DNA of 64,000 nt from sequence record MT995927.1; one strand, written 5' to 3'. Of the stretch, positions 8,056-36,007 are shown in pieces. A program made the position numbers and the translations under genes. Within the stretch, counting starts at the first letter, position 1. Each line of letters starts with the position of its first letter. The notes under the pieces are model-generated. The model saw nothing but the letters and a program-made list of their open reading frames with translations. It ran no database searches and was not told the DNA's origin.

Positions 8056-10299
8056 ATGAGCGTACATGCCCTAAGAGAACTGTTTAAACACAAAGGCGAA
8101 AAGAAATACGAAGTCTTCTCAATGGAAGATTTCATTGGTCGCCTAGAAAGTGAAATTGGTCTAAATGACAGCGTTGTTAGTCAAGGTCGTTCCCTTGTTA
8201 GCACCATTTCACATGAAAACTTCGGTACCGTACAAGCTACCGACGTTCAAGATGCTGCTGCAATTTATAACAAAATGCAAATGCTCGTTAACGACTATGG
8301 TTTCGAACGAGTAAGCTCCAGTGATCCTCAAGTACGCGCTCGTGAAGAACGTGTCCGTGAGAACCAGATCACCGCTGCTACCATGGCTGCTATCGCCTGT
8401 GCTGATGAAACTAAATATATCCGTGCACTACGTGGTATTACCAAAGCTAAAGCTTCTAATGAAGATCATGTTAAGGTTGTACAGCATCAGTTCAATGGCC
8501 CCGCTGGTGGCATTCAAGTATTCGAAAATGGTGTTGGCCTAGAGAACTATAACGAGAAGTCACAGCGTGATTTCCGTGTTGTAACTATTGGTTATAACCT
8601 AGCTGCTAGCCGTCAAGATGAATTCGCTGAGCGTATTTATCCGACCACCGTTATCAACCCGATTGAAGGTGGTGTTGTTCAGGTTCTTCCTTACATCGCT
8701 GTAATGAAAGACGTTTACCACGAAGTATCCGGCGTTAAAATGGATAATGAAGAAGTGAACATGGTAGAAGCCTATCGTGATCCTTCCATCCTCGACGACG
8801 AAAGCATTGCGCTAATTCCTGCCCTAGATCCGGCTGGCTCCAATGCTGACTTCTTCGTAGACCCGGCTCTTGTTCCTCCGTACACCATCAAGAACGAGCA
8901 GAACCTAACTATCACTACTGCTCCGCTAAAAGCGAACGTACGTCTTGATCTAATGGGTAACTCCAATGCTAACCTACTCATCCAGCGTGGCATGCTTGAA
9001 GTTTCTGACACCATTGATCCGGCTGGTCGTCTAAAGAACCTATTCGTTCTACTCGGTGGTAAAGTTGTTAAGTTCAAGGTTGACCGTCTACCTCGCGCTG
9101 TGTTCCAGCCCGATCTAGTTGGTGATACCCGGAACGCTGTTATCCGTTTCGATAGCGACGATCTAGTTGTTAGTGGCGATACCACTTTCATCGATGGTTC
9201 AGCTGACGGTGTTATCAATGATCTTAAGACCGCTAAACTAAGCCTACGTCTAAGCGTTGGTTTTGGTGGTACTATCAGCCTATCCAAAGGCGATTCTAAG
9301 TTTGGTGCTACCGACACTTACGTCGATAAAGTTCTAAACGAAGATGGCCAGGTAATGGATAATGCTGACCCGGCTGTTAAAGCTATTCTAGATCAGCTAA
9401 CTGACCTAGCTGTTATCGGTTTCGAACTAGATACTCGCTTCACCAACACTAACCGTCGTCAGCGTGGTCACCTACTACAGACCCGTGCACTACAGTTCCG
9501 TCATCCGATCCCGATGCACGCTCCTGTAACTCTACCGATGGACACCATGACCGATGAAGGTCCGGGTGAGGTTGTTAAAGCTCTAACTGTTAACACCAAC
9601 ATCCGTAACAGCAACAACGCTGTTAAGCGCATGCTTAACTACCTTGCTCAACTACGTGAAGTTGTACACAATGGTTACAACCGTCCGAAGTTTGGTATCA
9701 TCGAAGGTGCACTATCCGCTGTAATGCGTCCGACCTATCGTTACAAAGAACTAGATCTTGAGAAAGTCATCGACACCATCAAGTCTAAAGATCGTTGGGA
9801 CGACGTTTGCGCTGCGATCCTAAACTGTGTTAAAGCTGAGCTATTCCCGGCTCACCGTGATTCCAACATTGAAGCTGCCTTCCGTGTTATCTCCGGTAAC
9901 CAGGATGAAACTCCGATGTATCTCTTCTGCTCCGACAAAGAGATTGCTAACTATCTAATGACTAAAGGTGACGACCGTACTCTAGGTGCTTATCTCAAGT
10001 ACGATATCGTTTCCACCAACAACCAGCTATTTGATGGTAAGCTAGTTGTAATTCCGACCCGCGCAGTACAACAAGAAAACGACATCCTCTCCTGGGGCCA
10101 GTTCTTCTACGTATCTACTGTTATCGCTGACCTACCGATCACTCGTGGTGGTCACCAGGTTACTCGCGAAATCGCGGCCATTCCGTTCAACCTACACGTC
10201 AACAACATTCCGTTCGCGCTAGAGTTCAAGATCACTGGCTTCCAGAAAGTCATGGGCGAAACTCAGTTCAACGGTAAGCTTGCTGATCTTAAGCCGTGA
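8056..10299 (+). CDS. gp120: Major capsid protein (phiKZ gp120-like)
   Basis: 747 aa as recalled for gp120; strong codon bias; N-terminal propeptide ending at the prohead-protease-type site GLE|NYNEKS. Confidence 0.95.
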   Translation: MSVHALRELFKHKGEKKYEVFSMEDFIGRLESEIGLNDSVVSQGRSLVSTISHENFGTVQATDVQDAAAIYNKMQMLVNDYGFERVSSSDPQVRAREERVRENQITAATMAAIACADETKYIRALRGITKAKASNEDHVKVVQHQFNGPAGGIQVFENGVGLENYNEKSQRDFRVVTIGYNLAASRQDEFAERIYPTTVINPIEGGVVQVLPYIAVMKDVYHEVSGVKMDNEEVNMVEAYRDPSILDDESIALIPALDPAGSNADFFVDPALVPPYTIKNEQNLTITTAPLKANVRLDLMGNSNANLLIQRGMLEVSDTIDPAGRLKNLFVLLGGKVVKFKVDRLPRAVFQPDLVGDTRNAVIRFDSDDLVVSGDTTFIDGSADGVINDLKTAKLSLRLSVGFGGTISLSKGDSKFGATDTYVDKVLNEDGQVMDNADPAVKAILDQLTDLAVIGFELDTRFTNTNRRQRGHLLQTRALQFRHPIPMHAPVTLPMDTMTDEGPGEVVKALTVNTNIRNSNNAVKRMLNYLAQLREVVHNGYNRPKFGIIEGALSAVMRPTYRYKELDLEKVIDTIKSKDRWDDVCAAILNCVKAELFPAHRDSNIEAAFRVISGNQDETPMYLFCSDKEIANYLMTKGDDRTLGAYLKYDIVSTNNQLFDGKLVVIPTRAVQQENDILSWGQFFYVSTVIADLPITRGGHQVTREIAAIPFNLHVNNIPFALEFKITGFQKVMGETQFNGKLADLKP

Positions 10300-10380
10300 G
10301 CTGGAAAGGGTTACCGTTATCTAGAAAATGGGACTATCCGTTATTTGGAAGACGGTAATGCCCGGAAGTTAGAAGAGTAA
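10300..10380 (+). other. Candidate stop-codon readthrough extension of the major capsid protein (26 aa)
   Basis: In frame after TGA: AGKGYRYLENGTIRYLEDGNARKLEE-TAA, ends just before the terminator. Confidence 0.6.
10315..10344 (+). repeat. 30-bp direct repeat, copy 1
   Basis: CGTTATCTAGAAAATGGGACTATCCGTTAT, identical to 35966-35995. Confidence 0.95.
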
Positions 10381-10389
10381 CAGACATAG

Positions 10390-10409
10390 GCCCTCCCTTC
10401 GGGGAGGGC
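10390..10409 (+). terminator. Terminator of the capsid transcript
   Basis: GCCCTCCC-TTCG-GGGAGGGC followed by TTTAT. Confidence 0.85.
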
Positions 10410-10420
10410 TTTATGTTGTA

Positions 10421-10452
10421 TTACATTAAAAAAAGTTTAAGATCTATATTAC
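10421..10452 (+). promoter_or_regulatory. phiKZ-type early promoter (A tract plus TATTAC)
   Basis: TTACATTAAAAAAAGTTTAAGATCTATATTAC, 31 of 32 nt identical to 62126-62157; TATTAC is the reported early promoter core. Confidence 0.8.
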
Positions 10453-10495
10453 AGTAATGATCATGATCTTCTAATTTAAAAATAGGTTAATCCAA

Positions 10496-10948
10496 ATGAA
10501 CGTTCAATTATTTCCAGAAGTCATCGAAAGATGGCAAGATGCCCTAAGGGTATCTCTTATAGAAAAAAATACCATGGTAGATAATAAGATGTCTACCGTA
10601 GATGATGATAAATACATTAATACTTTCTTTGAAGAATTCCATCCTGTTCAGGATGCCTTTATGCCCAAAGGGCTAGAGGACTTTATTACTGATTATGCCA
10701 AGAAAAACATTGAGGAGATCCTTCAAGAAAAACAGTTTAAGCGGGCCACCGAAAAGTTATATTGTTCGAGTGACCCGCATAAATGGCAGAAATCAAGTAA
10801 TAAGGAAAAGAGTGAATCCTTTAAGGGAAGGTCCGTACATCAAACTAAAAAGAGGCTCCCCAACATTGTAGATTTGGAGGCCGTTGTGATTAAGGTAGAT
10901 TTCAATGGTAACACTAAAAATTGCGGGGCTTACTCAAGTATCAGTTAA
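10496..10948 (+). CDS. Hypothetical early protein (gp121-like)
   Basis: 150-aa ORF behind the early promoter, AGGT RBS. Confidence 0.7.
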   Translation: MNVQLFPEVIERWQDALRVSLIEKNTMVDNKMSTVDDDKYINTFFEEFHPVQDAFMPKGLEDFITDYAKKNIEEILQEKQFKRATEKLYCSSDPHKWQKSSNKEKSESFKGRSVHQTKKRLPNIVDLEAVVIKVDFNGNTKNCGAYSSIS

Positions 10949-11987
10949 GCCTACTATCGATCACCCGTATGATAAGAAATCGGGAACTGCATACACTAAG
11001 GGTGATCCATACGCTAATTGGAATCTCCCTGTCTCACGTTTTGTTGAGTATCGGAATGAATCATTTCATCGTATTACTGTAGTCGATTCATCTGGTCACG
11101 CTATCAATATTGGGACATCCCGTAAGTATGTAATGTCTAATAGACTAGTAGTTAAGGTCATTTACCGATGGAGTGGTGATGATAGTTTTAACTATGAAGT
11201 TATGGCTAAATCTATTCCAGGTTTTACACCTGAGGAAATGTTAGAATATATTCAGTCATTTAGTCGACAGACATTCGATCAGTTTAATAACCAGCTATCT
11301 GAGATTACTATTTGGTATTCAATTGACTTATCAAAACTAGTAGATCAGTATCATGGTGGTTGGATTCAGAGTTTAGGTATCCAAGTATTTAAAACTGAGT
11401 ATAGTCAGTATTTTGAATTTTATCCAAATAGAAATATTAGTCCTCCTGGTTACAGCGGACTTAGTCCAGAAGAAGAAGCACTTTCTAATCAAGTATGGAA
11501 TGAAACATATTCTTTAACGTATAATACTGACATCAATAAACCAGATAAATTGTTTTATGTAATGGCTGGCAGAATTATGGCCATTGAGTCAATCTACAAT
11601 CCATCATTAGATCCTGGTCTTATTGTTAATATCCGTGGTAAGCATGGATGTATTAGTCATAATGGCGAAAAGAGATATGTAATACCTCCTGAACAGTTCC
11701 ATGAAAATGGTTTCTTTAGAACACATGAAGAAGCTGCTGCAATGGTTGGAATTAAAGATAAGAAAGTTATTGAACGTCTTAAGACTGCACTCTTAACAGC
11801 GGCTGATATTAAGGAAAGGGAAGCCCAGGAAAAAGCAGCTGGTACGTTTGATAAAGAATTCAAACCAAAAGATGTTGTATTGATTCATGGTCTAAAATGG
11901 GGTGATCTAAACTCCATTGCCTCTGATCTAGTATCATCCATTAAAATTGTAGGTTCACTGATGGATTTAATTTTGCCAAAAGTTTAG
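10905..11987 (+). CDS. Hypothetical protein (gp122-like)
   Basis: 360-aa ORF overlapping the previous gene by 44 nt, AAGGT RBS. Confidence 0.8.
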   Translation: MVTLKIAGLTQVSVKPTIDHPYDKKSGTAYTKGDPYANWNLPVSRFVEYRNESFHRITVVDSSGHAINIGTSRKYVMSNRLVVKVIYRWSGDDSFNYEVMAKSIPGFTPEEMLEYIQSFSRQTFDQFNNQLSEITIWYSIDLSKLVDQYHGGWIQSLGIQVFKTEYSQYFEFYPNRNISPPGYSGLSPEEEALSNQVWNETYSLTYNTDINKPDKLFYVMAGRIMAIESIYNPSLDPGLIVNIRGKHGCISHNGEKRYVIPPEQFHENGFFRTHEEAAAMVGIKDKKVIERLKTALLTAADIKEREAQEKAAGTFDKEFKPKDVVLIHGLKWGDLNSIASDLVSSIKIVGSLMDLILPKV

Positions 11988-11996
11988 GAGTTTATA

Positions 11997-13628
11997 ATGC
12001 CGGATCCATTTCTAATTGAAAAGATTCGTGAAAATACGCCTTGCATGAATCCAACACTAGCAAATGGTATCACAGTCGAACACACCATGACTCGTGATCC
12101 AAATACTGGTGTTAATATGACCAGGCGTTATATTGATTCTTTATTTGATATCAGTTCAGTTCTATTTCCCGATGGCTTCAAATATGAAGGCAATCGTGCA
12201 TGTACACCGCTTAAGCATTTTGAAGAGATTACTCGGGAATATAATGCTAAGCGTATTGCCAATATTGCTCCAACTGACATGTACATGATTGACCTAATGT
12301 TTAGTTATAAAGGGGAAATGCTTTATCCTCGTCCAATGTTGTTACCAGCTTTTAAGAGAGGCAATATGGTAACTATCAATGGTGCGAAATATATCGGTTC
12401 ACCAGTATTAACTGATGTTGGGTTCTCTGTACTTAATGATAGCATCTTCATCCCGTTTCGTCGTACTAAGCTAACCTTTAAACAAACTGACCACCATTAC
12501 ATGTGCAATGGTCAGCGTAAAATCATGTATGTGATCTGGTCACAGATTCACAATGAAATGGCTAAGCGTACTAAACGAGATCTGGATAATCGACCACATA
12601 TTGAGTCATGTTTAGCTCATTATTTCTTCTGTCAGTTTGGAGTAACTCAAACTTTCAAACAATGGGCTAATGTAGATGTTAAGTGTGGACTGCTGTCTGA
12701 TTTTCCTGAAGAAGAATATCCACGTGAAAAGTGGAATATTTATTCCAGTGCAACATTAAAAGGCAAACATCCCACCGGTGAAATGGTTCTTGTTATACCT
12801 CGTCATCAAGAATCTATTTTTGCCACACGACTTATCGCTGGTTTCTGGTATGTGGTCGATGCATTTCCAATGCGGTTTACTCGACCTGAATATGTAGATA
12901 GTACCAACTTATGGCGTGTTATCCTAGGTCACATGGTGTTTGGTGATTTTGAGCACCAAGGTAAAGTAGAGGAAAACATTGATTCACACCTACACAGTTT
13001 CTGTAATTCACTAGACGAAATGACTATTGAAGAACTTAAAACAGTTGGTGTCAATGTAAGTACTATTTGGGAACTTCTTTACGAGATCATGACTAGTTTG
13101 GCTCATCATCTTTATGCTACTGATATTGATGAAACTAGTATGTATGGTAAAAGGTTAACAGTACTGCATTACTTGATGTCAGAGTTTAACTATGCTGTAA
13201 GTATGTTTGGTTATATGTTCCAGTCTAGGCGTGATCGTGAATGGACTGTACAAGAGCTAAACGAAGGTTTAAAACGTTCTTTTAAACTACAGACAGCTAT
13301 TAAACGATTAACAGTGGACCATGGTGAACTCGATACAATGAGTAATCCAAACTCCAGTATGTTGATTAAAGGGACATCTATCCTAGTTACACAGGATCGC
13401 GCTAAAACAGCTAAGGCTCATAATAAGTCTCTAATCAATGACTCATCTAGGATTATTCACGCATCTATTGCTGAGGTAGGTCAATATAAAAACCAACCTA
13501 AGAACAACCCGGATGGTCGAGGTAGGCTTAATATGTATACCAAAGTGGGTCCAACTGGACTAGTTGAACGTCGTGAAGAAGTGCGTGAAATAATTGACAA
13601 CGCTCAATTAATGTTCCGTGCAAAATAA
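11997..13628 (+). CDS. gp123: Non-virion RNA polymerase, beta-like subunit N-terminal part (gp123-like)
   Basis: 543 aa and position as recalled; rpoB-like elements (TINGAKYIGSP, H.S.AEVGQ...P...PDGRGRLN). Confidence 0.85.
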   Translation: MPDPFLIEKIRENTPCMNPTLANGITVEHTMTRDPNTGVNMTRRYIDSLFDISSVLFPDGFKYEGNRACTPLKHFEEITREYNAKRIANIAPTDMYMIDLMFSYKGEMLYPRPMLLPAFKRGNMVTINGAKYIGSPVLTDVGFSVLNDSIFIPFRRTKLTFKQTDHHYMCNGQRKIMYVIWSQIHNEMAKRTKRDLDNRPHIESCLAHYFFCQFGVTQTFKQWANVDVKCGLLSDFPEEEYPREKWNIYSSATLKGKHPTGEMVLVIPRHQESIFATRLIAGFWYVVDAFPMRFTRPEYVDSTNLWRVILGHMVFGDFEHQGKVEENIDSHLHSFCNSLDEMTIEELKTVGVNVSTIWELLYEIMTSLAHHLYATDIDETSMYGKRLTVLHYLMSEFNYAVSMFGYMFQSRRDREWTVQELNEGLKRSFKLQTAIKRLTVDHGELDTMSNPNSSMLIKGTSILVTQDRAKTAKAHNKSLINDSSRIIHASIAEVGQYKNQPKNNPDGRGRLNMYTKVGPTGLVERREEVREIIDNAQLMFRAK

Positions 13629-35473: not shown

Positions 35474-36007
35474 ATGCAGGATATCTTTCCGTATGACATG
35501 GCATCGAGGGACGCGCTAGTAAAACTTGCGCGGGATGATTTAAAAATAAACTTCAAACCAGAAACAGTTACATTTGAAGATATGTTTTTTAGTCCAACCA
35601 CGATTGAGCCTGGACGTACATTTATTGAAATGATCGACATTACTACTGACATTAAGTACATGTTAACTTACCGTCGGTTAGATTTTGCTGATCCACGAGC
35701 TATTGGTGAAGGATCTATCCTTAAGATAGTTGGTACTTTAACACCTAAAGCAATTGCTGAAGAAATCAACCGTTCACGGGGTTGGAAGCTTGGACCAGAT
35801 GATGTTTCATTTGATACAACACCAATCAATGCAACTACGGATGTTGTTCCATACACGATAGTAGCTATGTCGAGTAGTTATGCTTACTATGGCGAATGTA
35901 ATATACTAATTCAACGTATTGATGACACATCAGATACTATCCGGCTATTAGAGAATGGCGCAGCACGTTATCTAGAAAATGGGACTATCCGTTATCTAGA
36001 AAGTTAA
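35474..36007 (+). CDS. Virion structural protein with C-terminal RxLE(N)G repeats (gp143-like)
   Basis: LTYRRLDF family motif; ends RLLENGAARYLENGTIRYLES. Confidence 0.8.
   Translation: MQDIFPYDMASRDALVKLARDDLKINFKPETVTFEDMFFSPTTIEPGRTFIEMIDITTDIKYMLTYRRLDFADPRAIGEGSILKIVGTLTPKAIAEEINRSRGWKLGPDDVSFDTTPINATTDVVPYTIVAMSSSYAYYGECNILIQRIDDTSDTIRLLENGAARYLENGTIRYLES
35966..35995 (+). repeat. 30-bp direct repeat, copy 2
   Basis: Identical to 10315-10344. Confidence 0.95.

What the first reader, a model, noticed from the sequence alone, without database searches (positions are those of the whole stretch)
10291..10380. Candidate programmed stop-codon readthrough giving an extended major capsid protein
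Seen: the capsid ORF ends AAG CCG TGA, and the same frame continues for 26 sense codons to TAA at 10378-10380, just before the transcript terminator at 10390. The product would be ...LADLKP-[X]-AGKGYRYLENGTIRYLEDGNARKLEE. The extension is not random: it has a short Gly linker and a 3-fold R(Y/K)LE(N/D)G repeat, the same motif that ends the gp143-like virion protein. It has no start codon or RBS of its own in that frame. The gene uses TGA, the leakiest bacterial stop, whereas most structural genes here end in TAA. The extension uses non-optimised codons (TTG, TTA, CGG), consistent with low stoichiometry. Established: phages such as T7 (10A/10B) make C-terminally extended minor capsid forms by recoding. 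I do not recall this being described for phiKZ gp120. Inference: a few capsomers carry a peptide tag that docks fibres or decoration proteins.
Basis: partly seen in the sequence, partly recalled or inferred. Interest (0 to 1): 0.9.

Follow-up and report, generated by a model that had tools for sequence, protein, structure and literature searches.

The report
Leaky stop extends phiKZ capsid protein
The major capsid gene of the giant Pseudomonas phage phiKZ ends in a leaky TGA stop followed by a short in-frame coding stretch that is conserved across many related phages, so a few capsid subunits per particle probably carry an extra 26-residue tail that also ends many other phage surface proteins.

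Summary
The window is phiKZ. The capsid gene gp120 (8056-10299) ends AAG CCG TGA. Frame 0 then stays open for 26 codons to TAA (10378-10380), just before the terminator (10388-10411).

One genome alone would prove little, because 11 of 59 ORFs in the window have an open tail that long. The comparison with relatives is decisive.
- Of 35 distinct capsid-gene 3' ends in the phiKZ-like clade, 24 have an in-frame tail after the stop. 23 of those stops are TGA, never TGA-T.
- Of the 11 ends without a tail, 10 stop at TAA.
- Frame 0 has no stops in 601 codons; the other two frames have 32 and 27.
- The invariant Arg, Glu and Gly positions use several synonymous codons.
- No tail has a start codon of its own.
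- None of 120 capsid protein clusters has the tail fused without a stop.
- Two relatives carry a 95-codon extension, an Ig-like domain plus the same tail.

The 21-residue tail, (R-x-x-E-[DN]-G-x-x) twice then R-x-L-E, also ends gp143 and many unrelated phage tail proteins.

Best reading: conserved programmed UGA readthrough that makes a minor extended capsid subunit. I found no protein-level evidence, and the tail's function is inferred.

The parts
8056..10299 (+). Major capsid protein gene gp120 (747 codons plus the TGA stop).
   Evidence: ORF list. Pfam PhiKZ_MCP, E = 5e-228. 100% identical to phiKZ PHIKZ120. PDB 8y6v gp120 chain of 747 aa.
10297..10299 (+). The leaky stop codon TGA. It is preceded by Pro (CCG) and followed by G.
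   Evidence: TGA is kept in 23 of the 24 distinct relatives that have the in-frame tail. The base after it is A, G or C, never T.
10300..10314 (+). Five-codon Gly-rich linker of the extension (A-G-K-G-Y).
   Evidence: Relatives have a 4-7 residue linker of two types, x-G-K-G-x-x or R-N-P-G-x-x.
10315..10377 (+). The 21-codon C-terminal tail: R-x-x-E-[DN]-G-x-x twice, then R-x-L-E-x.
   Evidence: Invariant R/E/G columns are encoded by 2-5 synonymous codons. Frame 0 has 0 stops in 601 codons. The same module ends gp143 and many phage tail proteins, 17-22 residues before their stops.
10378..10380 (+). TAA, where the extended product would terminate.
10388..10411 (+). Intrinsic terminator hairpin of the capsid transcript, followed by a T-rich tail. 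The extension therefore lies within the mRNA.
   Evidence: A hairpin at the same place shows compensatory changes in relatives.
10308..10363 (+). Predicted RNA hairpin inside the extension, starting about 9 nt after the TGA. It is probably a by-product of the Arg/Gly codons, not shown to be selected.
   Evidence: MFE -29.6 kcal/mol, z = -3.55 against dinucleotide shuffles. Against synonymous recodings of the same peptide the mean z is only -0.53 over 21 lineages.
35474..36007 (+). gp143: a DUF7941-fold virion protein and reported lysis regulator. It is the only other phiKZ gene ending in the same 21-residue tail (tail at 35942-36004).
   Evidence: AlphaFold2 model with pLDDT 87; its only PDB fold match is the phiKZ peripheral baseplate entry 9xqd, E = 3e-6. 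Papers PMC12894885 and bioRxiv 10.64898/2026.04.21.720040.
35966..35995 (+). 30-nt exact DNA copy of 10315-10344, shared between the capsid extension and the gp143 tail.
   Evidence: The identity is not seen in other genera, which suggests recent gene conversion within Phikzvirus.

Best explanation
**What it is.** This looks like programmed, low-level readthrough of the UGA stop at the end of the phiKZ major capsid gene.

**How it would work.**
- Most ribosomes terminate and make the normal 747-residue protein.
- A small fraction decode UGA and continue for 26 codons to the TAA at 10378. Decoding is most likely by near-cognate host tRNA-Trp, because the phage has no suppressor tRNA.
- The product is a minor capsid subunit with a 5-residue Gly-rich linker and a 21-residue tail.
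- The capsid model has 1620 capsid protein chains. A readthrough rate of 0.1-3% would therefore give a few to a few dozen extended subunits per head. The rate and copy number are inferred.

**Where the tail would sit.** In the solved capsid, residues 728-747 form a six-helix bundle at the centre of each hexamer, and in pentamers they touch the outer decoration protein gp244. An extension would probably project outward from capsomer centres (inferred).

**What the tail is.** It is a short, mobile C-terminal module. AlphaFold2 predicts a three-stranded mini beta-sheet for the gp143 copy. The same module ends gp143, TP901-1-type tail tube proteins, large tail proteins and fibre-like proteins of unrelated phages. 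In two phiKZ relatives it follows an Ig-like domain in the capsid extension. The most likely role is a surface-displayed accessory adhesion or docking module (inferred).

**Shown versus inferred.** Shown: the anatomy, the conservation, the selection at amino-acid level and the link between stop-codon type and presence of the tail. Inferred: that the extension is translated at all, how often, and what it does.
For: **Conservation across genera**
- TGA plus an in-frame extension of 24-30 codons carrying the motif occurs in 22 distinct relatives. These include PhiPA3, PS119XW, Phabio, Psa21, 201phi2-1 and Noxifer.
- A 95-codon version occurs in two more, L120 with TGA-C and L110 with TAA-C. They are 55% identical with no gaps.

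**Selection on the peptide**
- Frame 0 has 0 stops in 601 codons. Frames +1 and +2 have 32 and 27 stops in 579 codons each, and 20 and 18 of the 22 sequences have a stop in those frames.
- The invariant Arg, Glu and Gly columns use 2-5 synonymous codons, including switches between CGN and AGR.
- pN/pS is 0.65 in frame 0, against 0.82 and 1.03 in the other frames.

**No independent translation**
- None of the 22 sequences has an in-frame ATG, GTG or TTG before the first repeat unit.

**Stop codon tracks the tail**
- With the tail: 23 TGA and 1 TAA. Without it: 10 TAA and 1 TGA.
- Fisher p is about 2e-6, computed on a tally that lacked L120 and L121 and not corrected for phylogeny.
- L032 keeps an out-of-frame remnant of the last repeat after a TAA-T stop.

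**Full-dose extension appears to be avoided**
- None of 120 capsid protein clusters carries the tail without a stop.

**The tail is a real protein module**
- It is the C-terminus of gp143 in 41 of 53 homologues.
- It ends many phage proteins. A degenerate DNA pattern gave 62 hits in IMG/VR, with my own estimate of the chance expectation below 1. Nearly all hits lie 17-22 residues before a stop.

**Other support**
- The extension breaks the strong codon bias of the capsid gene.
- phiKZ has no UGA-suppressor tRNA.
- The terminator lies downstream of the extension.
- The C-terminal arm sits at the capsomer centre and contacts the outer protein gp244 (PMC11297242).
Against: - **No direct evidence.** The PDB chain of gp120 is 747 residues. 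The capsid and whole-virion cryo-EM papers do not mention an extension. I found no ribosome-profiling or peptide data for phiKZ covering this region.
- **Non-independent lineages.** The lineages share ancestry, so the Fisher test overstates the significance.
- **Weak overall selection.** Purifying selection averaged over the tail is only moderate, because the positions between motif residues vary freely.
- **Not essential everywhere.** Several lineages in the clade have lost the tail.
- **An awkward case.** L110 has TAA before its 95-codon extension. TAA is normally read through much less than TGA.
- **Unknown rate.** No readthrough efficiency for UGA in Pseudomonas was obtained here.
Confidence: 0.8

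Rival explanations
1. The conserved element is an untranslated RNA structure in the 3' end of the capsid mRNA, for stability or termination. The open frame and peptide motif would then be incidental.
For: phiKZ folds into a strong hairpin within the extension (-29.6 kcal/mol, z = -3.55 against dinucleotide shuffles). RNAalifold finds a short stem conserved in relatives, with some compensatory pairs.
Against: Against synonymous recodings of the same peptide, the native sequences are not significantly more stable (mean z = -0.53, none individually significant). The invariant columns are conserved as amino acids while their codons vary. Frame 0 alone is free of stops. The same peptide is the true C-terminus of many proteins. 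There is no Rfam match.
Confidence: 0.05
2. The UGA is decoded as selenocysteine, directed by a SECIS-like hairpin just downstream. The extended subunit would then carry selenocysteine at the junction.
For: The conserved codon is UGA. A predicted hairpin begins about 9 nt after it in phiKZ and in several relatives.
Against: No bacterial SECIS family matched, even at E up to 10. The apical loops and stems differ between lineages and are explained by the peptide's own codons. One lineage has TAA at that position with the extension intact. The phage has no tRNA-Sec. I did not check whether the hosts have the selenocysteine machinery.
Confidence: 0.03
3. The 26 codons are translated separately as a small peptide, from a non-canonical start or by re-initiation, and are not joined to the capsid protein.
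For: In other phages, small ORFs of 44-78 codons with their own ATG consist of little more than the tail. A free-standing form of the module therefore exists.
Against: None of the 22 capsid-linked copies has an in-frame ATG, GTG or TTG before the first repeat unit. The motif is always in the capsid frame despite 3-nt indels at the junction. The stop is specifically TGA when the tail is present. The 95-codon versions begin an Ig-like domain directly after the stop, and the first in-frame start candidates lie within the domain: TTG at codon 10 in L110, GTG at codon 30 in L120.
Confidence: 0.05
4. The extension is a decaying remnant. A recent nonsense mutation or a recombination scar left part of a gp143-like 3' end behind the capsid gene, and it has no function.
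For: In phiKZ, 30 nt are identical to the gp143 3' end. Some lineages have lost the tail. An open tail of this length is common by chance within one genome.
Against: It is retained with TGA in 23 distinct lineages at synonymous divergence of about 0.6. Motif residues are conserved, there are no frameshifts, and no sense-codon variant appears among 120 clusters. The 30-nt identity is confined to Phikzvirus, so it is a later conversion event and not the origin.
Confidence: 0.02

Closest known systems
Qbeta A1 (readthrough) protein of Leviviricetes RNA phages
   Same: A UGA at the end of the coat gene is occasionally read through, giving a minor, C-terminally extended coat protein that is built into the capsid in a few copies. 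This comparison rests on established knowledge and was not tested here.
   Different: phiKZ is a 280-kb dsDNA tailed phage with a T = 27 HK97-fold capsid. Its extension is only 26 residues (95 in two relatives) and is unrelated in sequence. Incorporation into the capsid and any requirement for infection are not shown.
C-terminal Ig-like or other extensions of major capsid and major tail proteins made by programmed frameshifting (T3/T7 10B, Lactobacillus phage A2, Listeria phages A118/A500/PSA, SPP1)
   Same: A small, promiscuous accessory module is added by recoding at the 3' end of the gene to a fraction of an abundant structural protein. The same module sits in frame on other structural proteins elsewhere (review PMC5009743). 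Here the tail occurs on tail-tube, tail, fibre-like and DUF7941 proteins, and two relatives add a Big_2 Ig-like domain.
   Different: Here the extension is in frame 0 behind a stop codon, which means readthrough and not a -1 or +1 frameshift. In phiKZ the module is a 21-residue repeat peptide and not an Ig fold.
Luteovirid coat-protein readthrough domain (CP-RTD)
   Same: A coat protein stop is read through to give a minor capsid component that protrudes from the particle (bioRxiv 10.1101/2024.10.14.617924, listed).
   Different: That is a eukaryotic plant RNA virus with a large structured domain and known stimulatory RNA elements. No stimulatory RNA element could be shown here.
T4 Hoc, an Ig-like decoration protein at hexamer centres
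   Same: Hoc is a non-essential accessory module displayed at the centre of capsid hexamers. The gp120 C-terminus lies at that same position. This comparison rests on established knowledge.
   Different: Hoc is a separate gene product that binds after assembly. Here the module would be covalently attached to a few subunits.

Membership tests
Programmed stop-codon readthrough producing a minor extended capsid protein (Qbeta A1 type) | A leaky stop codon (UGA) at the end of the coat gene, conserved among relatives. | tested here: met
   TGA occurs in 23 of the 24 distinct relatives that carry the tail. The base after it is A, G or C, never T. Lineages without the tail use TAA in 10 of 11 cases.
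Programmed stop-codon readthrough producing a minor extended capsid protein (Qbeta A1 type) | An in-frame downstream coding stretch with no start codon of its own, conserved at the amino-acid level. | tested here: met
   0 stops in 601 frame-0 codons; synonymous codon variation at invariant residues; no in-frame start codon before the motif.
Programmed stop-codon readthrough producing a minor extended capsid protein (Qbeta A1 type) | The extended protein is detected, is present in virions, and its readthrough frequency has been measured. | not testable with these tools
   No peptide, immunoblot or ribosome-profiling data were found. The PDB chain is 747 aa.
Programmed -1/+1 frameshift extension of a capsid protein (T7 10A/10B type) | The extension is encoded in a shifted reading frame that overlaps the 3' end of the gene. 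| tested here: not met
   The extension is in frame 0, directly after the stop.
Promiscuous accessory modules on phage structural proteins (Ig-like domain paradigm) | The same module is found at the ends of different, unrelated structural proteins in many phages. | tested here: met
   62 IMG/VR hits. Carriers include a TP901-1-family tail tube protein, phrog_1101 tail proteins, a YadA-like fibre protein and DUF7941 proteins.
Promiscuous accessory modules on phage structural proteins (Ig-like domain paradigm) | The module has an Ig-like fold. | tested here: not met
   The phiKZ extension is a 21-residue repeat with no Pfam or PDB match. Only relatives L110 and L120 add a Big_2 domain, scoring 30.1 and 19.5 bits against a cutoff of 22.8.
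Bacterial selenocysteine insertion (UGA plus SECIS) | A SECIS hairpin with a conserved apical loop at a fixed distance after the UGA. | tested here: not met
   No Rfam SECIS match at E up to 10. The predicted hairpins differ between lineages and are no more stable than the peptide's codons imply.
DUF7941 (PF25613), for gp143, the other carrier of the tail | Sequence or fold match to the DUF7941 module. | tested here: met
   phiKZ gp143 itself is below the cutoff (18.3 bits against 27). Many homologues carry PF25613. The AlphaFold2 model matches only the phiKZ peripheral baseplate entry 9xqd (E = 3e-6, TM 0.59-0.68). The Goslar preprint lists gp143 as DUF7941.

The most novel reading that the evidence does not exclude
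The 21-residue tail may be a general self-associating or docking peptide of phage virions, folding as a three-stranded mini beta-sheet. Under this reading, the few readthrough capsid subunits use it to recruit other tail-bearing proteins to the head. In phiKZ the only other carrier is gp143, a DUF7941 filament-type virion protein that also regulates the holin. Capsid production would then be physically linked to attachment of a fibre cloud, or to the timing of lysis. The 30-nt gene conversion between the two copies would keep the partners matched.
Probability: 0.15. Interest if true: 0.9.

Novelty: new variant of a known kind. Interest (0 to 1): 0.78.

Why it matters
- **A missed product in a model phage.** phiKZ is the model jumbo, nucleus-forming phage. 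Its capsid has been solved to near-atomic resolution and its virion proteome has been catalogued, yet this gene product is absent from the annotations, structures and papers examined here.
- **A rare type of recoding.** If confirmed, it would to my knowledge be the first conserved programmed stop-codon readthrough in the major capsid gene of a tailed dsDNA phage; the searchable literature holds no such report. Known capsid extensions in tailed phages arise by frameshifting.
- **Weak readthrough may be enough.** With about 1600 capsid subunits per head, even weak readthrough would supply a handful of modified subunits.
- **An undescribed module.** The work also exposes a widespread 21-residue C-terminal module on phage surface proteins. 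It has no Pfam, NCBIfam or PDB counterpart.
- **Annotation consequence.** Gene callers and proteomics databases that stop at the TGA will never find the product.

Tried and rejected
**Analyses that led nowhere or were rejected**
- **RNA-structure explanation.** The hairpin looks strong against dinucleotide shuffles. It is not stronger than synonymous recodings of the same peptide. RNAalifold gave only a 5-bp stem besides the terminator.
- **Rfam.** A scan of 10200-10500 at E up to 10 gave only weak matches driven by the terminator, and no SECIS match.
- **PDB sequence searches.** Searches with the 26-residue extension and with a 38-sequence profile of the tail gave nothing significant.
- **Family libraries.** Pfam, PHROGs and NCBIfam have no family for the tail itself.
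- **Literature search for the motif.** The string matched only a surname.
- **Literature search for evidence.** Searches for readthrough, ribosome profiling or mass spectrometry covering the capsid gene's 3' end in phiKZ or 201phi2-1 found nothing relevant.
- **Metagenome scan.** It added only 7 loci.
- **Phage-encoded suppressor tRNA.** None exists. phiKZ tRNAs are Thr, Asn (two), Asp, Met, Pro and Leu.
- **More distant chimalliviruses.** LucasX, Ea35-70, Phobos, pVa-21 and RP31 lack the feature, so it is confined to the phiKZ-like clade.
- **ORFs upstream of short tail-bearing ORFs in other phages.** They could not be named; PHROGs gave one weak hit to central tail fibre J and one family of unknown function. 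Frameshift attachment there remains a lead only.

**Limits kept**
The capsid protein and the extension were always searched separately.

Full report
**Identity of the window.** The region is 100% identical to Pseudomonas phage phiKZ (AF399011 / NC_004629). Window position p corresponds to genome position p + 112 + 110100, that is p + 110212. ORF 8056..10299 is the major capsid protein gp120. It matches Pfam PhiKZ_MCP at E = 5e-228 and PDB 8y6v, whose gp120 chains are 747 residues long.

**Check of the observation.**
- The gene ends AAG CCG TGA at 10297-10299.
- Frame 0 continues for 26 sense codons to TAA at 10378-10380.
- A terminator hairpin with a T-rich tail follows at 10388-10411.
- The extension holds a 5-residue Gly-rich linker and then a 21-residue tail: two R-x-L-E-[ND]-G-x-x units and a terminal R-K-L-E-E.
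- The only in-frame ATG/GTG/TTG is a TTG at codon 16.
- Of 59 non-overlapping ORFs of at least 100 codons in the window, 40 end in TAA, 12 in TGA and 7 in TAG.
- The capsid gene has a strong codon bias. Leu is 70% CTA with no TTG or TTA, and Gly is only GGT or GGC. The extension uses TTG, TTA, GGA, GGG and CGG.
- Within this genome alone the open frame is not remarkable. 11 of 59 ORFs are followed by 26 or more open codons.

**Comparative test.**
- In Phabio, PS119XW, Psa21 and 201phi2-1 the capsid gene also ends in TGA. It is followed by 26-28 in-frame codons with the same motif.
- PhiPA3, Noxifer (61% capsid identity over the last 300 residues) and uncultured IMG/VR, metagenome and Logan contigs show the same arrangement.
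- I examined 35 distinct capsid 3' ends in the clade (58-100% identity). 24 carry the tail in frame after the stop, 23 behind TGA and one behind TAA. The other 11 have no tail, 10 ending in TAA and one in TGA-T.
- Fisher's exact test gave p of about 2e-6. It was computed before L120 and L121 were added and is not corrected for shared ancestry.
- The base after the TGA is A, G or C, never T. Stops in the tail-less lineages are mostly TAA-T.
- L032 still shows an out-of-frame remnant of the last repeat behind a TAA-T stop, which indicates secondary loss.
- Distant chimalliviruses (31% identity or less) lack the feature.

**Is the extension coding?**
- Across 22 distinct extensions, frame 0 has no stop in 601 codons. 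Frames +1 and +2 have 32 and 27 stops in 579 codons each.
- The invariant columns keep the amino acid while the codon varies. The first Arg uses CGT, CGA, CGC and AGG. The second uses CGG, CGT, AGG, AGA and CGA. Both Gly columns use all four codons.
- Nei-Gojobori pN/pS is 0.65 in frame 0, against 0.82 and 1.03 in the other frames.
- No extension has an in-frame start codon before its first repeat unit.
- None of 120 capsid protein clusters in the 5.8-billion-protein collection reads into the tail without a stop. An extension on every subunit therefore seems to be avoided.

**A longer version in two relatives.**
- L120 (TGA-C) and L110 (TAA-C) have 95 in-frame codons after the capsid stop.
- These encode a Big_2 Ig-like domain that starts directly at the first codon. 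Pfam scores are 30.1 bits in L110 and 19.5 bits in L120, against a cutoff of 22.8.
- The same tail follows the domain.
- The two extensions are 55% identical with no gaps. The first in-frame start candidates lie within the domain: TTG at codon 10 in L110 and GTG at codon 30 in L120.
- This is hard to explain other than by translation through the stop. It also suggests a surface-display role.
- The TAA in L110 remains a puzzle.

**RNA and alternative decoding.**
- phiKZ folds a strong hairpin about 9 nt after the TGA. Many relatives fold something similar.
- Compared with synonymous recodings of the same peptide, the native RNAs are not significantly more stable (mean z = -0.53). The hairpin is largely a by-product of the Arg and Gly codons.
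- No Rfam family matched, SECIS families included.
- The whole phiKZ genome encodes tRNAs for Thr, Asn (two), Asp, Met, Pro and Leu only.
- Near-cognate decoding by a host tRNA is therefore the most likely mechanism (inferred). Nine of the 22 short-extension lineages have Pro as the last sense codon. In E. coli this is known to weaken termination (established knowledge, not tested here).

**The tail is a widespread module.**
- In all six frames of the 280-kb phiKZ genome, the double unit plus terminal R-x-L-E occurs only twice: in the capsid extension and at the C-terminus of gp143. In both cases it starts exactly 21 residues before the stop.
- The two copies share 30 identical nucleotides. 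This is not seen in other genera, so it points to recent gene conversion.
- gp143 homologues keep the tail in 41 of 53 cases.
- gp143 is annotated as a virion structural protein. It has been reported as a holin-specific lysis regulator (PMC12894885). It is listed as a DUF7941 protein, a family proposed to form head-to-tail filaments at the peripheral baseplate (bioRxiv 10.64898/2026.04.21.720040).
- My AlphaFold2 model of gp143 has pLDDT 87. Its only significant PDB fold match is the phiKZ outer peripheral baseplate entry 9xqd (E = 3e-6). The tail is predicted, at pLDDT 69-79, to form three short strands with a period of 8 residues.
- A degenerate DNA pattern for the tail found 62 stretches in IMG/VR; by my own estimate fewer than one would be expected by chance. 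Nearly all lie 17-22 residues before the stop of otherwise unrelated proteins of 44 to more than 1600 residues, on contigs of all sizes.
- Carriers include a TP901-1-family major tail (tube) protein, phrog_1101 tail proteins and a YadA-like fibre protein.
- Several short tail-bearing frames overlap the 3' end of an ORF of 100-135 codons in another frame, and one of them has no start codon. This suggests frameshift attachment elsewhere. It was not resolved.
- No Pfam, NCBIfam or PDB entry covers the tail.

**Structural context.**
- In the 2024 capsid structure, residues 728-747 of gp120 form a six-helix bundle with a pore of about 9 Å at each hexamer centre.
- In pentamers these residues reach the outer decoration protein gp244.
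- The model has 1620 capsid protein chains (PMC11297242).
- An extension would therefore emerge at capsomer centres, probably on the outside (inferred). A six-fold crowded centre may explain why a full-dose fusion is never seen.

**Comparison with known systems.**
- It works like Qbeta A1 and the luteovirid CP-RTD, where coat-gene readthrough gives a minor extended capsid protein.
- It also resembles the frameshift-added Ig-like extensions of phage capsid and tail proteins (PMC5009743).
- It is not a frameshift case, it does not match SECIS, and in phiKZ the module is not an Ig domain.
- I found no report of readthrough at the capsid gene of a tailed phage in the searchable literature.

**Verdict.**
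It is unproven at the protein level.
- The function of the tail is open.

Noticed in passing
IMG/VR loci L040-L101: The 21-residue tail (typically R-L-L-E-D-G-x-x twice, then R-L-L-E) ends dozens of unrelated phage proteins. Examples are a TP901-1-type tail tube protein (L052), tail proteins of about 640-770 residues (L050, L058), a YadA-like fibre protein (L095) and many small proteins. No Pfam, NCBIfam or PDB entry describes it.
   Followed up: partly
L087:4100-4201, L079, L042, L043, L077, L057, L074, L083: Short frames carrying the tail overlap the 3' end of a 100-135-codon ORF in a different reading frame. L087 has no start codon in the tail frame. These may be frameshift-added or translationally coupled copies of the module.
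   Followed up: partly
L110:2863-3147 and L120:2978-3262: Two phiKZ-like relatives have 95 in-frame codons after the capsid stop (TAA-C and TGA-C), encoding a Big_2 Ig-like domain followed by the tail. The TAA case is unexpected for readthrough.
   Followed up: partly
window 10315-10344 and 35966-35995: A 30-nt exact repeat links the capsid extension and the gp143 3' end. It is confined to the Phikzvirus lineage and looks like recent gene conversion between the two copies of the tail.
   Followed up: partly
window 10407-10455, and the same place in L001-L004: Directly after the terminator, relatives conserve a GGCTTTATG(Y)(Y)GT motif and, about 20 nt further on, ATCTATATTAC. These are probably phage promoter elements for gp121, and they explain why DNA similarity runs past the extension.
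   Followed up: no
proteins P0055-P0174 (capsid homologues): 53 of 120 capsid protein clusters end in Pro. The more divergent ones carry long acidic or Pro-rich C-terminal linkers (ending ...P-E-P-T-P) and TAA stops instead of the tail. Several JGI records name this capsid protein 'virulence-associated protein VapD', which looks like a misannotation.
   Followed up: no
window 35474-36007 (gp143): The AlphaFold2 model of gp143 matches only the phiKZ peripheral baseplate structure 9xqd (DUF7941 fold). The literature also calls gp143 a cytoplasmic holin regulator. The two roles have not been reconciled.
   Followed up: partly
window 10905-11987 and 11997-13628: gp122 ends in TAG and the next gene, gp123, lies in the same frame 9 nt later, giving a 546-codon open stretch after the stop. 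This is probably plain adjacency. I did not examine it for readthrough.
   Followed up: no
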